The notes under the pieces: generated by a model
What the model was told of the DNA's origin: nothing
The model's input: only the letters and a program-made list of their open reading frames with translations
Databases searched by the model: none
NCBI GenBank assembly: GCA_001179505.1
Contig: CDMY01000117.1
Span: forward strand, 124,682 to 188,681
Source: Vitrella brassicaformis CCMP3155
Lineage: Eukaryota > Protista > Chromerida
Direction of reading: 5' to 3'
Length of the DNA: 64,000 nucleotides
Translations under genes and position numbers: made by a program
Part shown: piece after piece, positions 499 through 64,000 of the stretch
Numbering within the stretch: the first letter of the stretch is position 1
Layout: the number at the start of each line of letters is the position of its first letter

Positions 499-2238
499 CT
501 ACGGGGGCCCCGCATCGATGAGTGCCTGGATGTGGGGCGCGTACTGCGCATTGAGGGACGCCAGCTCCTCTGCCATGCGGTTGAGGTTCGCCTCGCTGGT
601 GCCGAGCAGTCGCGCAATCGTCCGGCTCATTAGCTTCATCATCTCACAGGGGTCACGGTGCGCCGGGTGGCGGTGGGCTTGGATGTTCGAGAGCTCGAGG
701 ACAACGGTTGCTTTCTCTGTGATCTTGTTGCACATCTCCACAGGCATATCAACAACCGCCTGCTGCAATGTGGCGCTGAAGGTGAGAAGTCTCGCGCCCA
801 CGTAGGTGAAGAGGTGATTGCGGACGAGGTCGGTGAAGTCGAGGGCCTTCTCGATCAGCTCACGCTTGACGTTGGGGGCACGCAGACGCCTCTGGACAGG
901 TAGGAGAGAAAGACGGCCATGCGATGCGTGTGTGCTATATGGGTAGGTGTGTGTTGGTGCGTACGCTGGTGCCGCAATGCTGGTGGATGGCCACCGTCTT
1001 GATGTCTTGTGTGTCCACAATGGCCACGATGCGCCTCCTCCACTCCTCAGGCGACAGGTACTGAACCAGGCTGAGGGGATCTGAGTATGTGTCTGGGCCC
1101 CCCAGAAGATACATCCCGGGGCCGAGGACAGCGACAAGGGCCTCCTTCTGGCAGAAACACATACAAAAGCACAGGTGAGCGTGTGTGACTGTTGTCCCCT
1201 CCTCGTGCGTTCATTCATTCTTGCCTTACTTACCATGGCCGACTCGCAGACGCTCCCAACGGTTGGCATGAAGAACCACCCCCCATCGCCCACCACACAG
1301 CTGCTCTTCCACCAAAACAGCGGACCAACCTCACTCAGGTCGCACTCGATGAGTGGGTTGGGCAGCAAGCGGCCGTGCGACTCGCGCACACACACCTCGA
1401 TGGCATGCGTCACAGTGGCCTTGACGCGCTCCATCACAGCCGGCAGCTTGTGGGAGGGAAGGGGTAGAGGGGTGCCCGGCTCAGCGACACGGGCCATGTT
1501 GAAGACTCTGTACACGACGAACTTGCCCGTGGGGTCGAGGGTGGTGGCGCAGGGTGGGGTCAAGGGGGGTTGGGTGCCGTCGCAGGAGGCGCTAGAGAGG
1601 GCCACGACGCAGCAGAGGGTGTCGTTGTAGCGTCTCGTGTTTAGGTGCAGGTGGCGGCTGTGTGGGGGGGTTTGAGTTCTGCTGAGCACCTCCTGGATGA
1701 TCTTGGTCTGCCCGCGGGCTAGCACCCGCTGGAACTCGCCCTCATCCATGTAGCCGAAGAGGTGCATGATGGCCGCCCGGCAGGACCGCAGCGCCGACTG
1801 AGACTCCTCCGACATGAGGTCGCCCATTTCCTTGCAGTGGTACTTATGGCGGGCGTCCCAGTCGCTCGCCCGGCACTCCTCGCTGCAGTAGATGACGACG
1901 TCGCAGTCGCTGCAGGCAAACATGGTGTCCTCCTGGTCCACCTTGCCGCAACAGACGCACACGCACCGGGCGGATGCGGTGGTGGGGCTGGCGGTGCTCG
2001 CGCTGGCGGCGAACTGGCGAGGACAGGTGTGTTTGTGGCCGCTCTTCCAGTCCTGCCGCTGGTGGGCCTGCATTGCACCACACAAGCATAGCACAGCACA
2101 TGCCAGCCAGCGATGCGGTGCAGCGGTGTTCCTCTTCTCTACCTTGCAGCAGTAAAAGCGGGCCTTGCACAAAGAGCACCGCTGCTCCGTGATCTCGCCG
2201 CACACCGCACAGGGGCCCGACAGATCTCCCGATGACAT
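499..2238 (-). CDS. Multi-exon protein with two N-terminal MYND-type zinc fingers and an unassigned C-terminal region
   Basis: CAVCGEITEQRCSLCKARFYCCK|AHQRQDWKSGHKHTC (intron 2068-2132 removed) and CVCCGKVDQEDTMFACSDCDVVIYCSEECRASDWDARHKYHC both fit the MYND pattern. ATG at 2238, TAG at 499-501. Confidence 0.8.
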   Translation of the reverse strand: MSSGDLSGPCAVCGEITEQRCSLCKARFYCCKVEKRNTAAPHRWLACAVLCLCGAMQAHQRQDWKSGHKHTCPRQFAASASTASPTTASARCVCVCCGKVDQEDTMFACSDCDVVIYCSEECRASDWDARHKYHCKEMGDLMSEESQSALRSCRAAIMHLFGYMDEGEFQRVLARGQTKIIQEVLSRTQTPPHSRHLHLNTRRYNDTLCCVVALSSASCDGTQPPLTPPCATTLDPTGKFVVYRVFNMARVAEPGTPLPLPSHKLPAVMERVKATVTHAIEVCVRESHGRLLPNPLIECDLSEVGPLFWWKSSCVVGDGGWFFMPTVGSVCESAMVSKARMNERTRRGQQSHTLTCAFVCVSARRRPLSLSSAPGCIFWGAQTHTQIPSAWFSTCRLRSGGGASWPLWTHKTSRRWPSTSIAAPAYAPTHTYPYSTHASHGRLSLLPVQRRLRAPNVKRELIEKALDFTDLVRNHLFTYVGARLLTFSATLQQAVVDMPVEMCNKITEKATVVLELSNIQAHRHPAHRDPCEMMKLMSRTIARLLGTSEANLNRMAEELASLNAQYAPHIQALIDAGPP

Positions 2239-2613
2239 GGTGACGACGGCTCAAAGCAGGGAGAATGGCGACCAACACGTCCGGCGGCTGCAATGCTGGG
2301 TAGGAAGGGAAGAGCGGTGGGGCGCAGAGCGGTCGGTCGGGTCTGCCGTGGTGCTCTGGACTCACAAAAAGATGCAAAAAGCCGCCTCACGAGAACTGAG
2401 CTCGCAGTCAGATGCTGAGCTTGCAGAGAGCGAAACCGAACTGGCGATGATTGGCGTTCCAGTTGGCGCTTCTACGGCGATGAAGCAAAAATGACGAGGT
2501 AACGGGAGTAGCGGTGATCTGTGTGGAGCGGGCGATGGAGGGAGTGTCGTGTGTCCGCTGTGCTGTTCAGGTGTGTGTAGTTCTTGTCACTCACTCCCGA
2601 GTGGCCATCCGCC

Positions 2614-4850
2614 ATGGCGGACACAGGTGGGCGGCCCGGGTGGGTGGGCTGGTGGCAATGGATGCACAGCAATGACGTTGAAGCGCATCGTGTGTTCTCT
2701 GCCGATTGTCGCTCTTTCAGATAACGTTGGTTTTGACGCGTTGGCCCAGGAGGCCATCGACACTCAGACGGTGAGCCGTGGCGCATCAGAACCGCTGCAT
2801 GTGCCAGCCCTTCTGCATTGTGTTGTGTTGTGTTGTGTTGTGTATGTCTCTGGTTAGGAGAGCATTGGTGAGGCGTTGGGGAAGGTGCGAGGCCTCGTCA
2901 ACCAGTTTGCGGAGTTTCAGGCGCAGGTCACACACACACAAAGATAGCATCACATGGACACACACGAAGAGAGGCAGAGTGCACCTGGATTGTTTTCTCT
3001 CTCTGTGTGTTGTCTCTGCGTGTGCAGGCGCGAGAGTTGTTGGGTTTTCTGACTTCCAAGGTGCGCATCAGATTACACCACACCACTCGGACGCCAGAGA
3101 GCGGGCATGCATGGGCTGCTGCTCTCCTGCTCTCTCTCTCCCTCCGTCCGTGTGTGGGTGTGGGTGCGTACAGGACACGGTCCGCGATAGTCGTTTGCAT
3201 CTGATTAATCGCGCCATCCACAATTTTACCGACGCGTACCGGGCCTATGGCAAGGGCCTCTCGCGCATCGCAGGGGTGGCGGGGGTACGCTCCCATCCAC
3301 ACACACATACACACACTCCCATCCCAGAGAGAGAGGAAGGATCCATCTCTTTCCTCTCTCTCTCTGTGTGTGTTGGTTGTGTGTGGCTGCAGTTGGAGGG
3401 CCATGGCAAGACGTTCAAGCTGGTGAAGCGCGCTGAGCCGCCCAAGAAGAAACCGGGCTCATCGAAGAAGAAGAGAAAATCGGGCAAACAGGTCGGTCAC
3501 GCCGCACCGACACATGAAGCGCACCAACACCGAACACCAATTCTTGTGTGTCGTGTGCCGTGTGCTGCCTGTGTGTGTGTGTGTGTGTGTGTGTGCAGGC
3601 TGCATTGCGACGTTCCCAGCAGCAGCAGCAGGGCCGCCCCGACCTCTTCTCGCTGCTGCCCGACGTGATTCGCGACAACCTGCTGCCCCTGCTGACCCCC
3701 TCGGACACCTGCTCCCTGGGCGCCAGCGCCGCATCGGTGGGAAGCAGCCAGGTGGGTGCCGCCGTCGCATCGGGCATCGACAAGTGCATCCGCACCGAGA
3801 ACCTCGGCGACGTGCTGTCCTACTCCACCATCCGGGAGTCGACCTCCGCCCGCCGGTTCTCGCAGATGGTGCGGCTGCACTACGCGATGGAGAAGGGGGG
3901 CTGCTGGCGGCGGAGCGGGCACATGATCCGCGTCGCCAAGCACCACGGGTGGGTCAGGTCGCTGCCCATCGAGCTCACCCCCGCCAGCCTGGAGCGAGCC
4001 GGCACCAAGACTGAGATCGACCGGCGGTCCCCGATGTCGGCGGTGCAGCTGATGCTCTTCACCGACCGCCTCACGCGCAACGGGGCCAATGTGGAGCTGG
4101 ACCAGAACCCGGTGTATCATGGCCTGGGTAAGCTCACACATGGATGGATGGATGGATGGGTGGGTGGGCTGGGAGAGAGAGGGGATGCATTTGATTGTGT
4201 GTCATTTAAACGTTTGTGTGCAGGTGGCCAGGTGTTTGGTGGCGAGTATCGCATCGGCGGCAGGACGGTGCAGGACCTGACGAGCAGGGTGACGGGCTCC
4301 CTGCTGTCCAACGGCGACGCGGTGCCAGACTCGGGCGAGAAGCTCCTCGAGTGTAAGGGTAAGTGTATGTAAGTCTGTCCACTCCACCACACACGACAAA
4401 CAACACAGTGACTCACTCTCTCTTGCTCTCCTTCCTTCCTGTCTGTCTGTCTGTCTGTCTGTCAGGTTCGGGCTACTACTACCAATCGCTGCACGACCCC
4501 ATTTTCTGCCGGTGAATGGAATGCTCCATCCATCCATCCATCAGGGCCGCCTCACCGCCTCATGGCAACACGCCGTCCTCCGCATTCATCTCTCTCTCTC
4601 TCTCTCTCTTGTGTGTGTGTGTGTTGTGTCTTCTGCAGGGTGCAGAGTGACTGGGGACACAAGGTCGCGTCAACGGGTGAGATCTACCCGCGGGAGACCG
4701 CCCGCTTCAAACGCGTCGAAAAACTCAGCCAGTCGGGGCCGCTGTACAGCAACGCCTGGTCGACCCGCAGCAGCTGGCACTCGGTACACCCACCCACCCA
4801 CACCACACACACAACCATGAGCCATGCACCGCACACAATACATCTGCTTG

Positions 4851-4890
<40 letters not shown>

Positions 4891-5134
4891 TTGTGTGCAG
4901 GTGGTTCGCCATCTGACGCTGTACGGGCACGAGAAGGACGACGAGTTCACTGTGCATCTGCGGATCACGGCCATCAAGGAGGGCCACGTGGAGGTGTCGC
5001 TGTGCACCACAGAGCCCGCCCCGCACACACGGGCCATCGCCAAGGCGTACGAGAAGATGGGCGAGGAGGAGGTGATGCTCATCTTCGGCAAGGAGGGCAT
5101 AGTGGCCGGTGGAGACGACCTCAGACACAACTGA
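2614..5134 (+). CDS. Lineage-specific multi-exon protein with a basic NLS-like patch and an F-box-like motif
   Basis: GT-AG exons join in frame from MADT|DNVGFDALAQ through KKKPGSSKKKRKSGKQ and FSLLPDVIRDNLLPLLTPSDTCSL (F-box-like) to SLCTTEPAPH...DDLRHN* (TGA 5132-5134). Confidence 0.65.
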
Positions 5135-51394: not shown

Positions 51395-53338
51395 TCACTC
51401 ACTCACCTGCCACACCTCCATCTCAGTGCACGTGAAGTCGATGGTCTGCGCCAATGTGCCATCGCCGTCTTCATCCCTCTCGCCAGTGTATCCCCCTGAC
51501 AGGTCTTCATTAATATTCATCCACTGATTGCAGCTGCTGAGGTCGGCCACCGGACCACGCCGACCAAACCCCAGACACAGGACTCCAGGAGGACTGCGAC
51601 CGATGCACACGTTGGCGATCATCCGGCCCTCAATGCTCCTCACCGCTCCCTGTGTGCCGGCCACCTCAACCTTCTGCCTGTCCTCCGGCAGCTCGATCTT
51701 GGTCGGCGTCTCGTACGCACCCGACAGCGAGAAGAAGAAGACGGGCACCTTGTACCAGTTGGTCCGTCTGGGATCGTCTGGCGGTGTGAGAGGACCGTCG
51801 ATGAAGCAGCCGAATCGGTGTGTGTCGCCGTCTCGGAGGGCGAAGAGCAGACCGCTCTTGCCGGTCACCTTGTTGAGGAAGGAGGCATACGTAAACGTGT
51901 CACGACTCGACCTGATATCAGCGCACAACAACGATGTCTGTGTGCCCGGCATGTCTGTCTGAGCTCACTTGTAAAGCAGTGACGGCGCCACGGCGATCCT
52001 CTTGTCGGCCATCTTCATCACCGCCAGCCACTCGTCGGCCGTCTTGATGATCGTGCTGTCCGCCGGCACCGGCGGGATCGAACTGAGGCCGTACATTCCC
52101 AACTCGACAGCGAAGATGGCCTTCTCGGCCGGCGCCACCACCGGCGGATGGACGAACCGGCCAGCCGGCATGACGGCCAAACGGCGAGCAAAGTCGACGA
52201 TGAGTTGCAGAAACCTGAAGGATGTTTGGTGGGCCTCCTGGTCGGGCCACTGAGTCCTGAAGAACAAAACACCACACACGTAGACACACATCGATGCTGT
52301 GTGTGTCGGGGGTCTTCTTTCGTACGGATCGAAACGCTTGACGAGTGCGTGAGCTGGCCCGAGGGGCGCGATGGTGCGGCGGAGGACCGACACATCCTCA
52401 TCAGACACGCTCAGTGTCATCAGCTCGATGTCTTCATCGCTGCTGTCGCCCTTGACGAACGGGCGCATCGCCGTCAGGAAGCCCTCCATGCGGCGCTTCT
52501 TGGCCCGCAGCGCCTCCAGCACACGACGATAGCTGCTCATGCACTCGTCGATCTGCCGAAAGGCCTCCTCGACACCCATCCCACCCCCATCACCCCCTGC
52601 CCCCTGGTCGCCGCCGTCGTCCTTCTTGCCATTGCCATCGGCCATCTCCACATCGCCCTGCCCGGCTCCCCCTCCACCTGCCGCTGCCGAGGCCGCTGCT
52701 GCAGCCGATGAGGCCAAGGCCTGTGGCTGCTCCTCGATCTCGATCTCGCCGCCCACCTTCTGCTCGATGAACAGCGAGTGGTGCTCGGCATAAGACGGAT
52801 CGTCGGCCTCCGGTGAGTGGATGGTGATCTCATCCAAATGGGGGCTCTCGAGGAGTGCCAGCCGGTCTCGCAGCCATTTGAAGTAAGCCGGGTGCATCTC
52901 GAGGAAGGGCAGCTGATTGGCGTCCTTGGGCAGCTGGTCGGTGAAGTGCAGCAGTAGCGTCGAGAGGTACGTCGTCTTCATCTTGCGATGCAGAAGTGCC
53001 GACACGGGAATGGACATAACAGTGCCGCCCACATTGAGCCGAATGCGGCCGTCCTTCCGCCGCGGCTCGATGGTGCCTCCATTGGCTGTGATGAGCTGCT
53101 TGATCTCCGAACTTAGCGCCTCGATTTCCTTCTCCGCCAGCTGTTTGGCCGTCCTGGTGATCTGGCTGAAGGTGTCCACAGAGGTAGCCGCGGCCTTGAC
53201 CAGCAGATCTCCCTCCTCCAGACCAGTGGTGACACCGTGAAGACGAGATGGGAGGACGGCCTCGTCATCAGCTGCCCTGCCGTCGTTGTCTTTGCGCTTT
53301 TTGGAGCTGCCAGACGCTGCGGCGGAGGCTGCCGACAT
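51395..53338 (-). CDS. KCTD-type BTB/POZ (two modules) plus C-terminal TLDc domain protein
   Basis: IRLNVGGTVMSIP...FLEMHPAYFKWLRDRL (BTB) and a second degenerate BTB (LSVSDEDVSVLRRT...FLQLIVDFAR). TLDc motifs LLYK|SSRDTFTYASFLNKV...HRFGCF...FFFSL...EMEVWQ. Confidence 0.85.
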
Positions 53339-53587
53339 CGCTGATCTATGGCGGGAAGAAAGGAACGAGGAAGTCCGCTTCCCTCCCGCGAGCTGGGAAG
53401 CTCGCAAATATGGCCAGGATTCGCGACACATGGTGGCCGTGCCCGATTCCAGCAGCGCGCCCACACCCGACGCACTGCAGGCAGAAGGACAGAGTGGTCT
53501 TAGCCTTAGCGTTCGGTGGTCCGTGCCAGTCACGTCATGCAGCCTAGACAGACAGACAGGCAGACAGACAGACAGAGTGGTGGTTAA

Positions 53588-53624
53588 ACTGACACTAACA
53601 AAGTTCACTGACACTAACAAAGTT
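53588..53624. repeat. 18-bp direct repeat, two copies, upstream of the BTB-TLDc gene
   Basis: actgacactaacaaagtt at 53588-53605 and 53607-53624. Confidence 0.9.
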
Positions 53625-55034
53625 GACAACGGGGGCAACCGACACCCCAAACACGCACTCACCCAACCGCCCACAACACATTGTCAAAAGTCACAAGAGC
53701 ACCATCAGGTATTAAGAGACGAGCAAGACAAGACAGTCAGTGTAGACTGTGTGTGTGTCTTGCGGCAGAAATGACTAGCGGGCGCTGGGGACCCGGCGAC
53801 GGGAGAGGGGTAGACAGACAGATGGGATGGATGAAGGTACCATGGCACGGAGGCCGGCAGATACAGACATAGTCAGTCGACTCGGCTGTCGAGGGGAGGG
53901 AGGGAGGGACGGAGGGAAAGAGGGAGGGAGGGAGGCAAAACCAGCTGAACAGAGGACACGTACATACGTACACACGCGCATCGGTGGGTGGATGGAGAGA
54001 CAGAGAGATAGGAACTAGCAGACACACTCACCGGCAGAAAAGGCGGGCAGAGATCTCGCACACACACACACACAGACATACACACATCCAGACATACCTA
54101 TAAGGAGAACGCCACGAAGGGAAAAGGAGGCAGACAGACAGACAGACAGAGACAGAAAGCCCCACAACTCCGGAATACACACCCAACACCAACTCACTCA
54201 CTCAGTCACTCACTCACTCACTCCTCCATCCATCCATCCAGAAACACGCAGGCACAAAAGTCACAAGTGCTGCTGCATGGCGTGGCAAGGGGGGCTGGGG
54301 ACTGCATAAATCATCAGCCACTGACTCTGACTCAATCACTCAGTCACTCACTCAGTCACTCACTGAGTAACACAGCTCTCGTCTGCCCTGCCTCCTTCAG
54401 CTACTTATTAAACGGTGCACAACGGCTTAAGTAATGCGTGTGAATCTGGTGCACTGCCTGTCTGTCTGTCTGTCAGTCAGTCCGTCTGTGTGCCCCCAAT
54501 CAGCACATCAATCAGGCAAGCAGACAGACGGACAGGCAGTCCACCCACCCTCCCCCCTCCCCGTTCAAAATGCCGCCTCGCTTAGCAGAGAGCGCGGTCG
54601 TACGCCTGTGTGTCTACGAACAGCATAACTGCGATAGACGTCTGTGTGTTTGTTTCCCCGTGTCAGGTCTAGTGTGTGAATGTGTGTGTATGCGCCTACT
54701 ATCATTGATCGATCGATCGTAAAGCTAGCTAGAGACACCAAACACCAACTCACCAACAGCCACACACCATGTACCAGACCAGATCAGCACTGCCATCCAT
54801 CCATCCATAAAGGAAAGAACAAAAGCAACTGGCGCCGGCTGGCCGCATCACCCACGAGCCAGCCACACACACAACACAGAGAGGCAGACAGACAGGCAGA
54901 CAGACAGGCAGGCAGACAGGCAGACAGACAGGCAGACAGACAAGTACAAAACCTGCCACCAACGCCGAAGTACCAAACATCCAAACCCATCCCCTCTCTC
55001 GCTCTCGCTCTCCCTCCATCTCCTCTCAATCACG

Positions 55035-57422
55035 TCACGAAGCCATCCACCGGAAGAAATTGGCAATGCTCGTCATCATCCCCGGCGACCCCTGCCCGCC
55101 ACCAACACCCCCGGGAGCCCCCCTCACTGGCTGTGGGACGACAGGGATCGGCCCACCCGACATGCCCGGGATGGGCTCGAGTGCGCGGTAGGCGGCGGTG
55201 TGTCTGAGGGGGAGGTGTGGGGGGTCCACTGAGTGCAGGTGGTTGAAGGCGACAAACACCAGAGCGGGATCGTCTGCGTCGGCGAAGGAAGTGAGCTCTC
55301 CCTGATGGAAGTGACACACACACACACACACAGAGGTGGCTGGATGGGTGGCTGAGTGGATGCAGTGGCTTACCCGGACAAGCTGCTCTGGTCTTGTGGG
55401 GTTCTGGAGGATGACCGTCACGGGCTGCGGTGGGTGTCTGAAAGCCGCGTCGCTCTTGATGTGGCCAATCGCCCATGCGTTGAGTAAGGTGGACAGCGGC
55501 ATACCTGCACACACACACACACGCTTTGTCTTTACGTCTGTCTCTCTCTGTGTGCTCATCAGTCAGCGCACCTTCCAGCGTCCGTGCGGTCCAGCTGTTG
55601 AGGAGAGTGGAACTTTCGACGATCATGTCTTCCTGTGTGTCGGCGACGATTGTGGCGTCGACGGTGGCCTCCAGCACTCGGGAGAGGATGCCCACTCGGT
55701 GCTCCAGGGACGCCTTCTCGCGCTTGCGCTCCGTCACGTCCTGCAAAAACACCAAGTGTCGTCAAACAGAGGGTGGAGGAGAATTCACAAATCGCATACA
55801 CGAGACGGTTCTTTATCGCATAGGTAATGACCGATGACCTTCTCTCTCTCTCTCCCTCTCTCTAGGTGGGGTCATCGCATCGGCTGCGCACCGCACCTGG
55901 ATGTAGCCGTATATGATGGTCGACGTGGGCGAGGCCCGTCTGCCTCCCGCTTGGAAGAAGCGAATCTCGCCGTCAGACCTCTCGTAGCGGATCTGACACA
56001 ACCACACCGACACGTCCACCCGTCCACACACTCGTCCTTGCGTACGTTCATGTCGTAGGGCTCCCCCTGGTCGACGCACTTGACGATCGCCCGCTCGATC
56101 CTGCCGCGGTCGTTGGGGTGCACGTGCTGCGTCCAGAAGCCCCGCAGCCGCTCGTCGGTCAGGGCTATGTCGCCGGCATTCTTGTCGTCGCCACCAGGAC
56201 CGATAGGCAGGCTGACAACCATACACACCACAAGGACATCCAGCCACTCGCGCCTCGCTCGCTCGCTCGCTCGCTCGCTCGCTCCCTCTATATGTGGGCT
56301 CACTTACTCAAAGTCCATCGGCAGAACGATCTCGCCCAGTGTGGAATCGTCCGTCGCGTTCTCGCCGCCATGGTGATCCCCCCTTCCACCAGCAGACCGC
56401 GCCGAGCGCTTCTCCTTTGACCCAGCACTCTTCGCCGACCCGCCGCCCATCTCGCTATCCACCTTCCCATCGTCGACCATCCCTTTCGGCTGTAGCGGGG
56501 CGGGGCTCGGCCGCGGCGGCGTCGGCTGATCCGACGTGACCGTCGCCATCATCAACGAGCCCGCCCTGGTCGTCGGGGTGCGCGTCGCCGGTGTCGCCGA
56601 AAGGGATGACGATGCAGCAGGGTGGATGGGCGGCTTTAACGTGTGCACTGCATGTGCGCGGTAGGTGTGCAGTGCGCCGACAGAAAGGCCGACATTGACG
56701 CTAGCAGGGGCTGATGCCTCGCTGGGTGCGAGGGCGGGGGCGACGGGGCCGTCGAGAAGGCGCGCGTAGGGCACTCTGCCGGTGGGCTGTCTGGATGAGC
56801 GGCCCGTGAGGCCCTCGATGACGCGGGTCTGGTAGAAATGGGTCTCCATGGGGCCCGAGGCGTCCCACTCCCTGCAGGGCACACACACACGGATAGGCGT
56901 AGACAACAAGGGGCATATATAATGGGGTGATTGGCTGCGTACCAGGCGGCGATGTCGACCATGAAGGCGAAGCTCTCGAGCAGTCGGCGGCGCTGGCCCT
57001 TCTCGCGGGCAACCTGCACACACGCAACACCCATACAGACACGTGTGTGTGCGGGCGGGCATTTGCCTTCTATCTAATCGTCTGACCCGATTGGTGTTGA
57101 AGACCGTGGATCTGTAGAACAACTCGAAGTGGCGGCTGGCGACCAGCAACAGCAGACCCACCACTAAACACACGCCAAGGACACATACAGAGAGAGAGAG
57201 AGCCGTCCGATTGAGACTGTCACACAGCCCCCAAGCAGTGCAGCTGCTCACCGGGGTAGAGCTGGATGAAGACCTCATCTGAAAAGATGCCGTCGACAAC
57301 GGCCTTGCTGATGAGGTGCACGGCCACCAGCCCCAGCACTGCCAACGACTGGCACTTGAAGACCAGAAAGGCCAAAGTGAGGAGGCCCAAGTTGTCAAGG
57401 TCAGTCCTGACAACGACGCACA

Positions 57423-57457
<35 letters not shown>

Positions 57458-58436
57458 GGACGTGGCTGTGTGAGTGTGATGAATGTGTGTGTCGGCTTGG
57501 GTACCCGGAATAGTGCTCGGCCATCTTCTCAGAAATGAACTCCTCCCCGCCAAACTCCTCGCCAAACTCCTCGCCAAACTCCGCGAAGTCGTCTTCGTCG
57601 ATCTCGTGCTCTCCGACCAACTCGGCACCATCGATCAATTCCTTGTGCATAGTTACGGTCGCCATGCAGGCGATGAAGAAAAAGTACAACACCCACCACT
57701 CAGCGCGATAAAAAGGCTGCAGTGCATTCTGGAGACACAGACAGAGACCCCATCCATCTATCCATCTATCCATCCAATTGAGCCTACTTCGAGCATGACG
57801 AGGAGTTTCCCCTGGTTGCGGACGTTGCTCCAGTCCTCCCCATCGCCTCGGGTGATGGCCAGACACATGTACCACCGCACCAGCATCTTGTGGAGCAGGG
57901 CATATGTGATAATGGCCACGGCCACGATGAGCGGCACCGTCATCCGCCGCCACCAGACATCGCCCATCCCATGCGCCCTGGTCTCGAACCACAGCACAAC
58001 GGCGTACGCGATCCAGGCAACGGAGAATATCACACCGGCGGTCTTGAGGGTCTCCTGCAGGCAGACAGACAGATGCATTGCCGGTACGCGTGTCGATGTG
58101 CTGACAGGCCAGCTGACTGACCTGAGTGTCTTCCTTGCAGAGCCTCTGGTACTGGAACTCCAGCTCGGGATCTTTGAATTTCATGCAGATGAACGGCAGA
58201 CCCGACCACTGCACACGACACACACGATGAAAACGCATCATTCCATTCTCCCTCCCTCCCTCCCTCCCTCTGACCCGATTGACGCATCCGATTGACCCCC
58301 ATTTGCTCTTGAAGCTCTTGACGAACTTGCCGCAGTAGGCGAAGATGCTGGCCGGCACGAGCATCTCGATGGCCACGTTGATGTTGGCATTGGCGCTGTT
58401 AGACATCCCGGCGCCATGCTCGCTGTGCAGCTGCAT
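55035..58436 (-). CDS. Multi-TM membrane protein with PAS-PAC and a second PAS domain, no catalytic output domain (copy 1)
   Basis: About 12 exons joined in frame. FKDPELEFQY, about six hydrophobic helices and RHFELFYR..F. Then IAAWEWD..., FWTQHVHPNDRGRIERAI...GEPYDMN|IRYERSDGEIRFFQAGG...GYIQ|DVTERKR (PAS_3/PAC) and a second PAS VLEATVDATIVAD...IVESSTLLNSW. Stop at 55035-55037. Confidence 0.8.
57550..57585 (-). repeat. Coding 12-bp tandem repeat, three copies (EFGE repeats), in copy 1 of the PAS gene
   Basis: ccaaactcctcg x2 plus ccaaactccgcg. Absent from copy 2. Confidence 0.85.
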
Positions 58437-59087
58437 CTGGGTCAGCGGGTCGCTCTTCTCGACCTTCTGGTGCTGTTGTTTGGCCTTATCGTCGCCGCCT
58501 GCCCGGATCTCCCTCCCTCGCCGGAGCCTTTCTTCCTTGCGAGCTTTTGTGAGGGCTGATCGTCATGGCTTTTCCCTTTTGAGCGCCGAGAGGGCGCACC
58601 TGAGGTGTCTGGAGACGATGGCGACGAGTTTCGACAGAGCAGGCGGACCAGAACGCCTACCACACAGTTCCGACCGGCTTCAACTTGGCGGCACGACGAC
58701 AGACCACCTCCCCATGTGCTCGACGACTGTGCATCACTCGTTCGCGACGGTAGGCATCTAATGTCTAAGTATGGAGGTGAGCAGATGCTATTTGAGCAGA
58801 TGCACTCATTGCATGTGGTGTTTCGACGTATCTGTGTCCACGCACAGCACGCTTTGATGCGTGAGGTGAAGGACTTCAGGACTTTGGGATGATCTCAAGA
58901 GAGAGATACGAGGAGATCACGCGTGGGCAAATCAGAGAATTGCTGCGGCCTTATAAGTGAGTTGAGCCCGTCATCGATCTCCAGCCTGGCGGGAAGTCAG
59001 CCAGGGGGCAGGTAGCTGGACAGAAGAGGAAGCATATGTGGCTGGCATGGGTGATATGGCTAATGCAGTTGTGTACGAGGTCCATAT

Positions 59088-59556
59088 AATTCGCAATCTT
59101 CTCGAACGGACGTTTTCTCGGTGAAGAACGGATGTTGAAGATTGTTTGTCTTCATGGAGATTCACTCACCTTGAGTGATCAATCATCAGTCAAACACCAT
59201 ATTTGCAATGAGTGAGTCAATGAATGACCAGTTTCATATCAGCTTCCCTACTCATTCATTCAAATCTCTTTGACTCACTTTTATATGTAAACGCCGGGAA
59301 GAGAGCCCGTCCATACGTTGCCTGTACAAAGTCTATATGGGCTGTTTTCATGGTGTGATACATATGAAAGTGAGTCAAAGAGATTTGAATGAATGAGTAG
59401 GGAAGCAGTGACATGAAAGTGGTCATTCATTGACTTTATTTAGTGCAAATATGGTGATTGGCTGATGATTGACTCACTCCAGGTCTCCATGAAGGCAAAC
59501 AATCACCAAAGTCCGTCTTTGACCGAGAAAAAGTGCGTTCGAGAAGATTGCGAATT
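59088..59556. repeat. Long imperfect inverted repeat (fold-back): arms of about 200 bp, spacer about 70 bp
   Basis: 59242-59281 is the exact reverse complement of 59367-59406 (40 bp). Similarity continues outward to aattcgcaatcttctcgaac (59088) and gttcgagaagattgcgaatt (ending 59556). Confidence 0.92.
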
Positions 59557-61138
59557 GTATGTATATGATCGAGCGCAATCAGCGGTACTTCAGGTCTTTG
59601 AGGTTGTGATAGTTGCGTGCGCGAGTCCCAAAAGATGATTTGCCGACACACCTCATCCGAGTGCGGGGGGCATCGCCATTTCATGTGACCTCAGGAACAG
59701 GATCGAGCACGAGGTCACGGAGTTGTCCGCGTTGTTTAGGGTGCGGCGCAATAGCGCGGCAGTGGTCAAGTCAGCAGACGAATCGACACATACACACACA
59801 CTCGCACACGAGAGAGGACAAGGAAGGGCGGGAGGGATGAGCGTGTGTCACTTTGTGTATGGATGTGTACGGATGGATGCGGCCTATGCCAGCAGTAGCC
59901 GCTGGCATTCATCGGCCGCTCGTCTCTCGAAACGCTCAGAAAGATGAAGGGAGGCAAAACCAGCTCAACAGAGGACACGTACATACACAAATTCTGACAC
60001 AATACACGCATCGGCGGATAGGCGGATGGACAGAGAGAGGGGTGGGAACTAGCAGATTCACGGTGGGAACCCGCAGATACACTCACCAACACACAGAAAA
60101 GGCCGGCAGAGGTCTCGCACACACACATACATACACTTCTTTACACACACTTCTTTACCCCTCACACACACACGGACATACACACACATGAATACATGGA
60201 TAAGACATATATGCATATCATATTTATATGGACAACAACACCATATATGGACAACAACATGAGGGAACCTTCACAGGTCCGAATAAACACCACACACCAA
60301 CTCATCCATCCATCCATCCAGGAGGCCGCGGACAACGAACGTATGGATGTATCATGCACACACACGAAAGTCAAAACAGCTGCTGCGTGTGCTGCGTGGA
60401 GGGCCGGGGGGCTGGGGAGTGTCTATATAAATCGTCAGCCATTGGCTCACTCACTCAGTAACACAGCTCTCGTCTGCCCTGCCTCCTTCCGCCACTTAGT
60501 CAACGGTGCACAACGGCGTACGGATGTACGTATATCTATATGTCTGGTGCACTGCCTGTCAGTCTGTCTGTCCGTCCGTCCGTCCGTCCGTCTGTGTGCC
60601 CCCAATCAGCACATCAATCAGGCAAGCAGACAGACGGACAGGCAGTCCAACCCCCCTCACACGCCCAGCCTCTCCTGTCGTTCAAAATGCCGCCTCGCTT
60701 AGCAGAGGTTACGGATGTATGCATGTATGTATGTATGTGTGTTCACGAATATATGTGTGTCGACACAGCATAACTGCGATAGATGTCTATGTGTTTGTGT
60801 CCTCATGTCAAGTCTAGTGTATGAATGTGTGTGTAGGCTCGTACTATCATCGATTGATCGATCATAAAGCTAGCTGGAGACACCAAGCACCAAACACCAA
60901 CTCACCAACACAGCCCACCACCCACACACCATGTACCACACCAGATCAGCACTGCGTGCCATCCATCCATAAAGAATGTAAGCAACTGGCGCCGGCTGGC
61001 CGCTCGAGACACTCACAGCCAGCCACACACAGAACACATAGCCACACAGACAGACAGACAGACAGAAAAGTACAAAACCTGCCATAATACCGAATACCAA
61101 ACAACCCTCCACCCCTCCCCTTCCCCCACTCAATCACG

Positions 61139-63532
61139 TCACGAAGCCAGCCACCGGAAGAGATTGGCAATGCTCGTCATCATCCCCGGCGACCCCTGCC
61201 CCTCACCAATACCCCCAGGACCCCCTCTCACTGGCTGTGGGATGACAGGGATCGGCCCACACGACATGCCCGGGATGGGCTCGAGTGCGCAGTAGGTGGC
61301 GGTGTGTCTGAGGGGGAGGTGTGGGGGGTCCACTGAGTGCAGGTGGTTGAAGGCGACAAACACCAGAGCGGGATCGTCTGCGTCCGCGAAGGCCGTGAGC
61401 TCTCCCTGATGGAAGTGACACACACACACACACACACACAGAGGTGGCTGGATGGATGGCTGAATGGATGCAGTGGCTTACCCGGACAAGCTGTTCTGGT
61501 CTTGTGGGGTTCTGCAGGATGACGGTCACGGGCTGCGGTGGGTGTCTGAAAGCCGCGTCGCTCTTGATGTGGCCGATCGCCCATGCGTTGAGTAAGGTGG
61601 ACAGCGGCATACCTGCACACACACACACACGCTTTGTCTCTACGTCTGTCTCTCTCTGTGTGCTCATCAGTCAGCGCACCTTCCAGCGTCCGTGCGGTCC
61701 AGCTGTTGAGCAACGTGGAACTTTCGACGATCATGTCCTCCTGTGTGTCGGCGACGATTGTGGCGTCGACGGTGGCCTCCAGCACTCGGGAGAGGATGCC
61801 AACTCGGTGCTCCAGGGACGCCTTCTCTCTCTTTCGCTCCGTCACATCCTGCAAAAACACCAAGTGTCGTCAAACAGAGGGTGGAGGAGAATTCACAAAT
61901 CGCATACACGAGACGGTTCTTCATCGCATAGGTAATGACCGATGACCTTCTCTCTCTCTCTCCCTCTCTCTAGGTGGGGTCATCGCATCGGCTGCGCACC
62001 GCACCTGGATGTAGCCGTATATGATGGTCGACGTGGGCGAGGCCCGTCTGCCTCCCGCTTGGAAGAACCGAATCTCGCCGTCAGACCTTTCGTAGCGGAT
62101 CTGACACAGGCACAGCCACAGCCACACCCACCCACACACTCGTCGTTGCTCCTGCCCTTCTCTGTTCGGTCGCGTACATTCATGTCGTAGGGCTCCCCCT
62201 GGTCGACGCACTTGACGATCGCCCTTTCGATTCTGCCGCGGTCGTTGGGGTGCACGTGCTGCGTCCAGAAGCCCCGCAGCCGCTCGTCCGTCAGGACTAT
62301 GTCGCCGGCATTCTTGTCGTCGCCACCAGCACCGATAGGCAGGCTGACAACCACACACACGACATGGACATCCAGCCACTCGCGCCTCGCTCGCTCGCTC
62401 GCTCGCTCGCTCCCTCTATATGTGGGCTCACGCACTCGAAGTCCATCGGCAGAACGATCCCCTCCAGTGTGGAATCGTCCGTCGCGTTCTCGCCGCCATG
62501 GTGATCCCCCCCTCCCCCGGCAGACCGCACCGAGCGCTTCTCCTTCGACCCCGCACTCTTCGCCGACCCGCCGCCCATCTCGCTATCCACCTTTCCATCA
62601 TCGACTATCCCTTTCGGCTGCAGCGGCGCCGGGCTCGGCCGCGGCGGCGTCGGCTGATCCGACGTGACCGTCGCCACCATGGACGAGCCCGCCTTGGTGG
62701 TCGGCGTGCGCGTCGCCGGTGTGGCGTAGGATGACGGTGCAGCAGGGTGGATGGGCGGCTTTGACGCGTGGGCGCGGTAGATGTGCAGCGCGCCGACAGA
62801 AAGGCCGACATTGACGCTAGCAGGGGCTGATGCCTCGCTGGGTGCGAGGGCGGGGGCGACGGGGCCGTCGAGAAGGCGCGCGTAGGGGACCCTGCCGGTG
62901 GGCTGTCTGGATGCGCGGCCCGTGAGGCCCTCGATGACGCGGGTCTGGTAGAAATGGGTCTCCATGGGGCCCGAGGCGTCCCACTCCCTGCAGGGCACAC
63001 ACACGGATGGGCATAGACAACAAGGGGCATATATAATGGGTTGATTGGCTGCGTACCAGGCGGCGATGTCGACCATGAAGGCGAAGTTCTCGAGCAGTCG
63101 GCGGCGCTGGCCCTTCTCGCGGGCAACCTGCACACACGCAACACCCATACAGACACGTGTGTGTGCGGGCGGGCATTTGGCTTCTACCTAGTCGTCTGAC
63201 CCGGTTAGTGTTGAAGACCGTGGATCTGTAGAACAGCTCGAAGTGGCGGCTGGCGACCAGCAACAGCAGACCCACCACTAAACACACGCCAAGGACACAT
63301 ACAGAGAGAGAGGGAGCCGTCCGATTGAGACTGTCACACAGCCCCCACGCAGTGCAGCTGCTCACCGGGGTAGAACTGGATGAAGACTTCATCGCTCCAG
63401 ATGCCGTCGACAACGGCGTGGCTAATGAGGTGCACGGCCACCAGCCCCAGCACAGCCAACGACTGGCACTTGAAGACCAGAAAGGCCAAAGTGAGGAGGC
63501 CCAAGTTGTCGAGCTCAGTCCTGACAACGACG

Positions 63533-63565
<33 letters not shown>

Positions 63566-64000
63566 GGAGGGAGAGAGAGAGAGAGAGACGTGTGCGTGGT
63601 GAATGTGTGTGTGGTGTGTCGACTTCATTCCGTACTGACCCCGCGTAGTGCTCGGCCATCTTTTCAGAAATGAACTCCTCGCCGTTGCGCTCGATCTCGT
63701 GCTCTTGGCCCTCGCCCTCGCCCATCTCAATCATGTGCTCGTGGAGAGTAATGGTCGCCATGCAGGCGATGAAGAAGCAGTACAACACCCACCACTCTGC
63801 GCGATAAAACGGCTGTAGTGCATTCTGAAGACACAGACAGAGAGAGACCCCATCCATCTATCCATCTATCCATCCAATTGAGCCTACTTCGAGCATGACC
63901 AGGAGCTTTCCCTGGTTGCGGACGTTGCTCCAGTCCTCCCCATCGCCTCGGGTGATGGCCAGACACATGTACCACCGCACCAGCATCTTGTGGAGCAGGG
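61139..64000 (-). CDS. Paralogue (copy 2) of the multi-TM PAS-PAC-PAS protein; 5' end lies beyond the window
   Basis: Exons and introns align collinearly with 55035-57900 at an offset of about 6.1 kb. Ends ...NLFRWLAS*. Confidence 0.8.

What the first reader, a model, noticed from the sequence alone, without database searches (positions are those of the whole stretch)
55035..64000. Tandem pair of membrane PAS-PAC-PAS sensors with no output domain
Seen: a ~6-TM region framed by FKDPELEFQY and RHFELFYR..F, motifs reminiscent of the membrane anchors of eukaryotic nucleotide cyclases and PDEs. It is fused to a bacterial-style PAS_3/PAC (WEWD...VHPNDR...GYIQDVTERKR) and a second PAS, then a short Pro/Gly tail and stop. 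There is no kinase, cyclase, GGDEF or PDE domain. Known: such PAS-PAC units normally feed histidine kinases or cyclases in the same chain. Inference: stand-alone receptor or adaptor subunits that signal in trans, possibly as a heterodimer of the two paralogues, i.e. an undescribed sensory module in an apicomplexan relative.
Basis: partly seen in the sequence, partly recalled or inferred. Interest (0 to 1): 0.7.

Follow-up and report, generated by a model that had tools for sequence, protein, structure and literature searches.

The report
Membrane-anchored double-PAS proteins without enzyme domain
Two neighbouring, nearly identical genes of the alga Vitrella brassicaformis encode membrane proteins with six membrane helices and two PAS sensor domains but no enzyme part. 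They belong to a family of about nine genes seen only in this species, whose way of passing on a signal is unknown.

Summary
Window 55035-58436 (minus strand) is a 13-exon gene for an 811-aa protein. Window 61139-64000 is its tandem copy, cut by the scaffold end; its first exons lie on scaffold C326.

Both copies are transcribed and spliced as modelled. Each encodes a cytosolic N-terminus, six membrane helices, a conserved exit helix, a PAS_3 domain split by a disordered insert of about 180 aa, a second PAS fold and a short Pro/Gly tail.

There is no kinase, cyclase, GGDEF or PDE domain in the proteins or at any family locus. The end of the protein is backed by a C-terminal motif shared by four paralogues. 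A full transcript contig of one paralogue also runs through the stop into the 3' UTR.

The genome is Vitrella brassicaformis CCMP3155. The family has about nine loci there. An exhaustive search of 1.84 billion proteins with the membrane part found only Vitrella paralogues.

The likeness to cyclase or PDE anchors was not supported. A homodimer model passed its controls (0.59 against 0.09). A copy 1/copy 2 heterodimer cannot be told apart from a homodimer.

My best reading is a dimeric, membrane-tethered PAS receptor or adaptor that signals through partner proteins. The scan noted a paralogue the same way before (s1-218679). I rate it a new variant of a known kind, of moderate interest.

The parts
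55035..58436 (-). Copy 1 gene. CDS of 13 exons: 58436-58275, 58208-58122, 58054-57788, 57728-57505, 57406-57252, 57163-57087, 57013-56943, 56871-56308, 56211-56046, 55992-55897, 55740-55572, 55504-55374, 55301-55035. It encodes 811 aa. The start could also be Met11 or Met25.
   Evidence: All introns are GT-AG and the frame stays open. The joints are the same as in the database model of copy 2. Spliced transcript contigs end at 57788, 58053, 56308, 56870, 56047/56211 and 55570/55739.
61139..64000 (-). Copy 2 gene (P0001, 659 aa as held), cut by the scaffold end inside exon 3. Exons: 64000-63888, 63824-63640, 63520-63366, 63277-63201, 63127-63057, 62987-62436, 62343-62178, 62100-62005, 61848-61680, 61612-61482, 61405-61139.
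   Evidence: Exon mapping against copy 1. The translation equals P0001. The 5' part lies on scaffold C326:64474-65216. All 29 variant letters in the spliced contigs of run X1 are copy 2 bases.
58049..58436 (-). Cytosolic N-terminal region of copy 1 (residues 1-85). It carries the family motifs W..IGC...W..LP and F.D.ELE.QY.
   Evidence: Family alignment A1 and the copy 1 model.
57120..58048 (-). Six-helix membrane region of copy 1 (residues 86-313, with introns). It includes the variable acidic TM3-TM4 loop (exon 4) and the invariant FKCxS turn.
   Evidence: Hydropathy. No Pfam, PDB or fold match. Mean identity among paralogues is 26%.
56945..57119 (-). Exit helix from TM6 to PAS_3 (residues 314-347: FYRS..VAREKGQRRRLLESFAFMVDIAA), with one intron.
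   Evidence: With the first PAS_3 part, it has the highest mean identity among paralogues (57%). It is a long helix in the AF2 models. It is a symmetric interface in the dimer model.
56799..56944 (-). First part of PAS_3 (WEWD...YQTRVIEGLTGR, residues 348-372).
   Evidence: Invariant columns in A1. Strands and helices in the AF2 model.
56163..56798 (-). Low-complexity insert of about 180 aa inside PAS_3 (residues 373-552).
   Evidence: pLDDT is below 35 in the model of the paralogue. Length and sequence vary among paralogues. The insert is kept in the mRNA: contigs cover 56308-56870.
55732..56162 (-). Second part of PAS_3, the PAC part (FWTQHVHPNDR...GYIQDVT, residues 553-626), with two introns.
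   Evidence: Pfam PAS_3 at 2e-9, 38 bits. PDB 3mr0 at 6e-6 and 3nja at 5e-5. pN/pS is 0.04 between the copies.
55233..55731 (-). Inter-PAS helix and second PAS fold (residues 627-746), with two introns.
   Evidence: The AF2 model gives a strand-helix-strand PAS pattern at pLDDT 85-90. Foldseek matches tandem-PAS structures. pN/pS is 0.08.
55035..55232 (-). Tail (residues 747-811): the conserved PPxLPLR motif (55226-55203), a Pro/Gly-rich stretch, the terminal ..FFRWMAS and the stop codon (55037-55035).
   Evidence: The terminal RW[MLF] motif is conserved in copy 1, copy 2, the C466 paralogue and the C432 paralogue. The transcript of the C466 paralogue runs through the stop.

Best explanation
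Each gene encodes a dimeric, membrane-tethered tandem-PAS receptor or adaptor with no enzymatic output.

Shown:
- The gene structure.
- Transcription and splicing of both copies.
- Six hydrophobic helices.
- A PAS_3 domain split by a disordered insert.
- A second PAS fold.
- No catalytic domain in the proteins or at any of the roughly nine family loci.
- Purifying selection that is strongest on the PAS domains.
- Restriction of the family to Vitrella.

Inferred:
- The N-terminus and both PAS domains face the cytosol. This follows from the even number of helices and the basic residues after TM6.
- Two chains pair in parallel along a helical spine: the TM6 exit helix, PAS_3, the inter-PAS helix and the second PAS, as in sensor kinases such as FixL.
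- A stimulus is sensed by a small ligand or cofactor in a PAS pocket, or by the membrane bundle with its variable outer loop.
- The stimulus changes the spine and the arrangement of the second PAS.
- Because the spine ends in a Pro-rich tail, the signal passes on by binding or releasing partner proteins. The tail carries PPxLPLR in all members, PPxY motifs in one subfamily and a conserved RW[ML]AS end in the other.

The two copies in the window are recent duplicates. They differ most in the outer acidic loop and in the tail.
For: Gene models agree with the database model.

Spliced transcript contigs exist for copy 1 (run X2, no differences) and copy 2 (run X1, 29 of 29 variant letters match copy 2).

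Domains: PAS_3 at 38 bits. FixL aligns through into the start of the second PAS. The tandem-PAS fold matches FixL, LOV-PAS, DosP, PpsR, bHLH-PAS and PER. Hydropathy gives six helices.

All family proteins (715-875 aa) show only PAS hits in Pfam. Guanylate_cyc, HATPase_c and PDEase_I loci of the genome never coincide with family loci.

The C-terminal motif is conserved in four paralogues. The transcript contig L022 of the C466 paralogue has 11 splice joints, the stop after RWMAS and 299 nt of 3' UTR collinear with the genome.

Selection between the copies: pN/pS is 0.29 overall, 0.04 in PAS_3 and 0.08 in the second PAS. Identity among paralogues is highest in the exit helix and PAS_3 (56-57%).

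The homodimer model scores 0.59 against a best control of 0.09. That mark was reached by 21 of 30 proteins solved as pairs and 0 of 23 solved as single chains. The runs agree in at least 29% of contacts and the partner pLDDT is at least 62. The symmetric contacts lie in the exit helix, the inter-PAS helix and both PAS sheets.
Against: No partner, ligand or cofactor is identified. No His or Cys is invariant in the second PAS. In PAS_3 one Cys is invariant and its role is unknown.

The docking motifs are short, were read by eye and could arise by chance in Pro-rich tails.

The dimer pass may reflect memory of solved PAS dimers. The tool itself warns that on eukaryotes only 1 of 7 proteins with no older solved relative reached the mark.

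RNA contigs do not cover the stop codon of copy 1 or copy 2 (depth is 0 at 54904-55054). The 3' end of these two genes therefore rests on homology with the C466 paralogue and on the conserved terminal motif.

The membrane model is poor (pLDDT 60), so nothing can be said about its fold.
Confidence: 0.5

Rival explanations
1. The six-helix membrane domain is itself the output. It would be a channel, transporter or lipid-handling module whose activity is gated by the cytosolic PAS domains, as PAS domains tune KCNH channels. No catalytic domain would then be needed.
For: A few polar residues are invariant in or next to the membrane helices: FKCxS, SRxxE, R27 and E47 of P0001. The N-terminal cytosolic segment is conserved. 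The membrane part matches no known anchor family, so its function is open.
Against: Apart from the insert and the tail, the membrane part is the least conserved region: 26% identity among paralogues against 56-57% for PAS_3, and pN/pS of 0.35 against 0.04. The sequence shows no pore or selectivity motif and no voltage-sensor pattern. Most invariant residues lie in predicted cytosolic turns, which fits contact with the PAS part rather than a pore.
Confidence: 0.2
2. The proteins are remnants or decoys of a sensor kinase or cyclase lineage that lost its catalytic part. They would now act as regulators that pair through their PAS domains with the few PAS-bearing kinases or cyclases of Vitrella.
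For: Outside Vitrella the nearest PAS relatives are bacterial and archaeal PAS histidine kinases (36-65 bits). The helical spine and tandem PAS are built like those of FixL-type kinases. The ESM Atlas shape search puts membrane GGDEF and cyclase proteins first, but weakly (TM 0.38-0.45). Vitrella has seven histidine kinases, five of them with several hydrophobic helices (PMC6324907).
Against: No trace of HisKA, HATPase_c, cyclase or GGDEF remains in any of the roughly nine members or downstream of them. The family is under purifying selection and has expanded, which does not fit decay. The membrane profile finds no kinase or cyclase gene in the genome. PAS_3 is rare in the genome outside this family, so PAS_3-bearing partners for pairing are few.
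Confidence: 0.15
3. The gene models are incomplete. In the cell, the transcripts of copy 1 or copy 2 would continue by splicing into a downstream exon that encodes an output domain.
For: RNA contigs do not cover the stop codons of these two copies. Unspliced transcript contigs lie downstream at 54559-54848. They could be 3' UTR or something else.
Against: ORFs downstream and in the spacer have no Pfam domain. The terminal RW[ML]AS-stop is conserved across paralogues that are only about 47% identical. The paralogue's transcript reads through the stop into the UTR. No joint leaves the last exon; all listed joints sit at microsatellites.
Confidence: 0.05

Closest known systems
Bacterial FixL-type sensor histidine kinases (membrane anchor, PAS-A, PAS-B, kinase)
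   Same: A membrane anchor is followed by a helical spine and two PAS domains joined by a helix, and the predicted dimer is parallel. It is among the best sequence matches in PDB and is the best fold match (8js5).
   Different: There is no HisKA or HATPase_c domain and no heme-binding His conserved in the second PAS. The membrane part is unrelated. The host is a eukaryote and the gene has 12 introns.
PAS_3/PAC domains of bacterial sensory-box proteins (PDB 3mr0, 3nja)
   Same: The motif pattern is the same (W.WD ... HPDDR ... Y..E.R....G..RW ... DVTERK) and the Pfam PAS_3 match lies above the cut-off.
   Different: Here the domain is split by a disordered insert of 100-190 aa and is not followed by an enzyme.
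Tandem-PAS proteins without an enzyme domain (PERIOD, bHLH-PAS factors, PpsR)
   Same: The two PAS domains act without any catalytic part, through protein-protein contacts. The fold matches at E 1e-6 to 1e-7.
   Different: Those proteins are soluble nuclear or DNA-binding proteins with bHLH or HTH parts. No sequence-level relation was seen, and this family is anchored by six membrane helices.
6TM anchors of class III nucleotide cyclases, of apicomplexan PDEs, and bacterial 6TM_PilS
   Same: Six helices are followed by a conserved exit helix that leads into a cytosolic signalling domain. There are weak shape and feature leads only.
   Different: No profile match to solved cyclases at E up to 10. 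No Pfam match, PF25323 included. No match to cyclase or PDE loci of the same genome.

Membership tests
PAS_3 / PAC (Pfam PF08447) | Profile match above the curated cut-off of 25.6 bits | tested here: met
   P0001 scores 38 bits and its C-terminal part 40 bits. P0003 scores 28.4 and P0004 36.2 bits. Exon 9 of copy 1 alone scores 25.5 bits.
PAS fold (second domain) | Five-stranded antiparallel sheet with flanking helices that matches solved PAS domains | tested here: met
   The AF2 model has pLDDT 85-90 over residues 246-341, with a strand/helix order typical of PAS. The tandem alignment to FixL PAS-A/PAS-B gives E 4e-10. No Pfam hit for this domain alone.
Sensor histidine kinase | HisKA/DHp and HATPase_c domains in the same chain | tested here: not met
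   No such Pfam hit in P0001-P0005. The HATPase_c loci of the genome lie on other scaffolds.
Class III nucleotide cyclase with a 6TM anchor | Guanylate_cyc catalytic domain, and an anchor plus transducer helix related to those of cyclases | tested here: not met
   No PF00211 in the proteins or at family loci. The membrane profile finds no cyclase in PDB at E up to 10 and none in the genome. Atlas shape rows reach only TM 0.41-0.45.
Cyclic-nucleotide phosphodiesterase with a membrane anchor | PDEase_I catalytic domain | tested here: not met
   No PF00233 in the proteins. The 38 PDEase_I matches in the genome all lie on other scaffolds.
GGDEF/EAL signalling proteins | GGDEF or EAL domain | tested here: not met
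   No hit in Pfam scans of P0001-P0005 at E up to 0.1 (P0001 up to 10).
6TM_PilS (PF25323) | Profile match to the PilS membrane domain | tested here: not met
   Absent from Pfam scans of seven membrane-region sequences at E up to 10. There is only a feature-based lead at 0.80-0.85.
KCNH-type PAS-bearing ion channels | Ion_trans pore and voltage-sensor domain, with the PAS domain at the N-terminus | tested here: not met
   No Ion_trans hit. The PAS domains lie C-terminal to the membrane part. NavMs/NavAb fold rows have E above 1.

The most novel reading that the evidence does not exclude
This is a receptor class of its own, born in the Vitrella lineage. An orphan six-helix membrane module would be coupled through a sensor-kinase-like helical spine to two PAS domains. 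Its only output would be the regulated recruitment of partners through proline motifs in the tail, or the gating of the membrane module itself.
Probability: 0.2. Interest if true: 0.65.

Novelty: new variant of a known kind. Interest (0 to 1): 0.42.

Why it matters
PAS domains nearly always feed an enzyme or a DNA-binding part in the same chain. A eukaryotic family that is expanded, expressed and under selection, and that joins a membrane anchor to two PAS domains and nothing else, shows another way to wire a PAS signal.

It also offers a compact system for asking how a PAS spine can signal without a kinase. The family makes up most of the PAS_3 domains of Vitrella, so it is probably a main sensory input of this alga.

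Its reach is limited. No relative was found in Chromera, apicomplexan parasites or any other organism, so it says little about parasite biology. The proteins are already in public databases as unnamed PAS/PAC proteins.

Tried and rejected
Membrane-part searches that found nothing useful:
- The Pfam scan of single exons gave only a weak PAS_3 hit.
- The first word-based search, with the 710-aa read-through ORF, found only copy 2's own model.
- The AF2 model of the membrane region was poor (pLDDT 60). Foldseek on PDB gave nothing at E up to 0.001. VIA-align gave only helical hairpins at Z up to 7.2. The Atlas shape rows were below TM 0.5.
- The language-model feature search gave unnamed clusters and, below 0.9, 6TM_PilS with PAS. 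Pfam does not confirm that lead.

Ideas rejected:
- Cyclase- or PDE-like anchor. Rejected at the sensitivity available.
- Bacterial contamination. Rejected because of the 12 spliceosomal introns and the spliced transcripts.
- Splice joints in table 5. Rejected as artefacts, because all sit at (GT)n or (CTGY)n microsatellites.
- A LOV or heme function for the second PAS. Not supported, since no Cys or His is invariant there.

Other blanks:
- Literature searches found no paper on these proteins or their accessions.
- C149 carries an unrelated PAS_3 gene.

Step left out: the joined 811-aa model of copy 1 was used only in local scripts. Copy 1 was searched exon by exon by reference, and copy 2's stored model P0001 stood in for the whole protein.
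Full report
**What is there**

The window is the last 64 kb of scaffold C117 of a genome of 72,700,666 bases in 1064 scaffolds. Those are the exact figures published for Vitrella brassicaformis CCMP3155 (PMC4501334). The paralogues carry NCBI names from that organism.

On the minus strand, 58436..55035 holds a gene of 13 exons. All its introns are GT-AG and it encodes 811 aa. A second copy starts again at 61139 and runs to the end of the window. The two stretches are 90.5% identical over 2.9 kb. Exons are 93.6% identical and introns 94.1%.

The database's own gene model of copy 2 (P0001, 659 aa) has exactly the splice joints I derived for copy 1, and it equals my mapping of copy 2. Copy 2 is cut only by the scaffold end. 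Scaffold C326 overlaps the last 117 bases of the window at 100% identity and carries exons 1-3 next to a run of N.

**Transcription**

Two runs that behave like transcriptomes hold spliced contigs:
- One contig joins exon 9 to exon 11 with 98 bases between them, which fits exon 10 (96 bases).
- Other contigs stop exactly at the exon ends 57788, 58053, 56308 and 56870 and run on.
- Exon 8 is covered from end to end.

All 29 differences of the X1 contigs from copy 1 are the bases of copy 2. The X2 contigs are identical to copy 1. Both copies are therefore expressed and spliced as modelled.

The contigs do not reach either stop codon. The joints that the tool lists all lie at microsatellites, and I take them for artefacts.

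**Domains**

The sequence is read here in copy 1 numbering.
- Pfam sees only PAS_3 (38 bits against a cut-off of 25.6) and a weaker PAS_4 hit.
- PDB sequence matches are bacterial PAS_3 domains (3mr0, 3nja) and FixL. The FixL alignment runs through the DVTERK linker into the start of a second PAS.
- An AF2 model of the cytosolic part of paralogue P0003 shows an N-terminal helix, a PAS domain interrupted by a disordered stretch of about 100 residues, a long helix, and a second PAS domain at pLDDT 85-90.
- Foldseek matches that model to tandem-PAS structures: FixL at 4e-10, then LOV-PAS, DosP, PpsR, bHLH-PAS and PER.
- Hydropathy gives six membrane helices in residues 86-313.
- Basic residues after TM6 and in the TM2-TM3 loop suggest that both ends and the PAS domains face the cytosol. 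The variable acidic TM3-TM4 loop would then face outward. This topology is inferred.

The insert in PAS_3 is about 180 aa in copy 1. It sits between GLTGR and the FWTQHVHPNDR helix and varies freely among paralogues.

**No output domain**

None of the family proteins (715-875 aa) has any Pfam hit other than PAS at E up to 0.1. Open frames downstream of copy 1 and in the spacer have no domain.

The genome's Guanylate_cyc, HATPase_c and PDEase_I loci all lie on scaffolds other than those of the family.

The C-terminus is conserved. Copy 1, copy 2, the C466 paralogue and the C432 paralogue all end in ..RW[MLF] plus two small residues, although the tails before it differ.

A JGI transcript contig of the C466 paralogue (L022) matches the genome across 11 splice joints. 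It ends the frame at RWMAS-TGA and continues for 299 bases of collinear 3' UTR. I therefore rate splicing past 55035 as unlikely (0.05), though it was not directly excluded for these two copies.

**The family**

Searches of the genome with the protein and with a profile of the membrane part find the same loci: two on C117, the C326 fragment that belongs to copy 2, C466, two on C432, C295, C947 and C700. A more divergent member lies on C268. That makes about nine genes.

An exhaustive HMMER search of 1.84 billion representative proteins with the membrane part found five proteins, all of them these Vitrella genes. Profile and domain word searches added one more Vitrella paralogue. After that came only bacterial and archaeal PAS kinases at 36-65 bits, matched over the PAS part alone.

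The sources call the proteins only "PAC" or "PAS fold-3 domain-containing". No paper held here mentions their accessions. An earlier first-stage note of this scan (s1-218679) describes a paralogue in the same terms.

**Selection**

Between the two copies, pN/pS is 0.29 overall. By region it is 0.04 in the second part of PAS_3, 0.08 in the second PAS, 0.35 in the membrane part and about 1.35 in the tail, where changes are few.

Among paralogues, mean identity by region is as follows:

| Region | Mean pairwise identity |
|---|---|
| Exit helix plus first part of PAS_3 | 57% |
| Second part of PAS_3 | 56% |
| Second PAS | 41% |
| Inter-PAS helix | 34% |
| Membrane part | 26% |
| Tail | 24% |
| Insert | 20% |

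**The membrane part**

It has no Pfam family. A profile of it finds nothing in PDB beyond chance GPCR rows at E 0.8. Its AF2 model is poor (pLDDT 60) and gives no fold match.

Two weak leads point to bacterial membrane sensors:
- Language-model features are near 6TM_PilS with PAS, at 0.80-0.85.
- Atlas shapes are near membrane GGDEF and cyclase proteins, at TM 0.38-0.45.

Neither reaches a level that I would call evidence.

**How it may work**

A homodimer of the cytosolic part passes the complex test. The score is 0.59 against a best control of 0.09. That mark was reached by 21 of 30 proteins solved as pairs and 0 of 23 solved as single chains. The runs agree in at least 29% of contacts and the partner pLDDT is at least 62.

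The contacts are symmetric along the exit helix, the inter-PAS helix and both PAS sheets, which is the arrangement of sensor-kinase spines. The pass may come from memory of solved PAS dimers.

The spine ends after the second PAS in a proline-rich tail. By eye, the tail carries PPxLPLR in all members, PPxY motifs in the P0003-P0005 group and the RW[ML]AS end in the other group.

From this I infer that a change sensed in a PAS pocket or in the membrane bundle is passed on by binding or releasing partner proteins. I give this 0.5. The rivals are:
- The membrane part is the effector: 0.2.
- The protein is a regulator of PAS-bearing enzymes: 0.15.
- The gene model is incomplete: 0.05.

**Verdict**

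This is a lineage-restricted variant of the membrane PAS sensor theme. It is already in databases as unnamed proteins and is undescribed in the papers searched. Interest is moderate.

**Method note**

The joined model of copy 1 was used only in local scripts. Database and folding tools received exons by reference or stored proteins, and the joined step was left out.

Noticed in passing
window 63884-64000 and L017 (G000:C326:64474-65216): Copy 2 is split by an assembly break. Scaffold C326 overlaps the window's last 117 bases at 100% identity and holds exons 1-3, directly beside a run of 300 N.
   Followed up: yes
L021 (G000:C268), about 2200-5000, minus strand: A ninth, more divergent family member. 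It has the WEWD...YQTKVVETLTGR, FWTRHV and PPFLSFK motifs, but its membrane part is not matched by the family profile. It may be a distant paralogue or a decayed copy.
   Followed up: partly
window 57505-57728 against 63640-63824 (exon 4): The predicted outer TM3-TM4 loop is the most divergent coding part between the copies: 81% identity and a 45-base length difference. Copy 1 has an acidic repeat (EEFG-like) that copy 2 lacks.
   Followed up: partly
window 27059, 28404, 31897, 38123, 42305, 43447, 48503, 49957: Eight blocks of exactly 300 N each. They are either scaffold gaps or withheld stretches.
   Followed up: no
window 51965-53674, minus strand: A 569-aa open frame just downstream of copy 1 has no Pfam hit at E up to 0.01. 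By eye it holds a BTB/K-tetramerisation-like stretch (RIRLNVGG...).
   Followed up: partly
window 54454-54947, 55304-55343, 55504-55535, 57181-57205: Introns and the 3' flank are rich in (GT)n and (CTGY)n microsatellites. These gave many false joints when reads were laid.
   Followed up: partly
L013:2212-4512, minus strand (G000:C466): The gene downstream of the C466 paralogue encodes a glycoside hydrolase family 16 domain (E 3e-18). It is not part of the PAS gene.
   Followed up: yes
P0007 (C432 paralogue), N-terminus: The protein starts MGVQGSK, a pattern typical of N-myristoylation (read by eye). The other members lack it.
   Followed up: no
G000:C149:137415-137645: One of only three PAS_3 matches in the genome-wide scan and the only one outside this family. 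It is unrelated to the family beyond the domain.
   Followed up: partly
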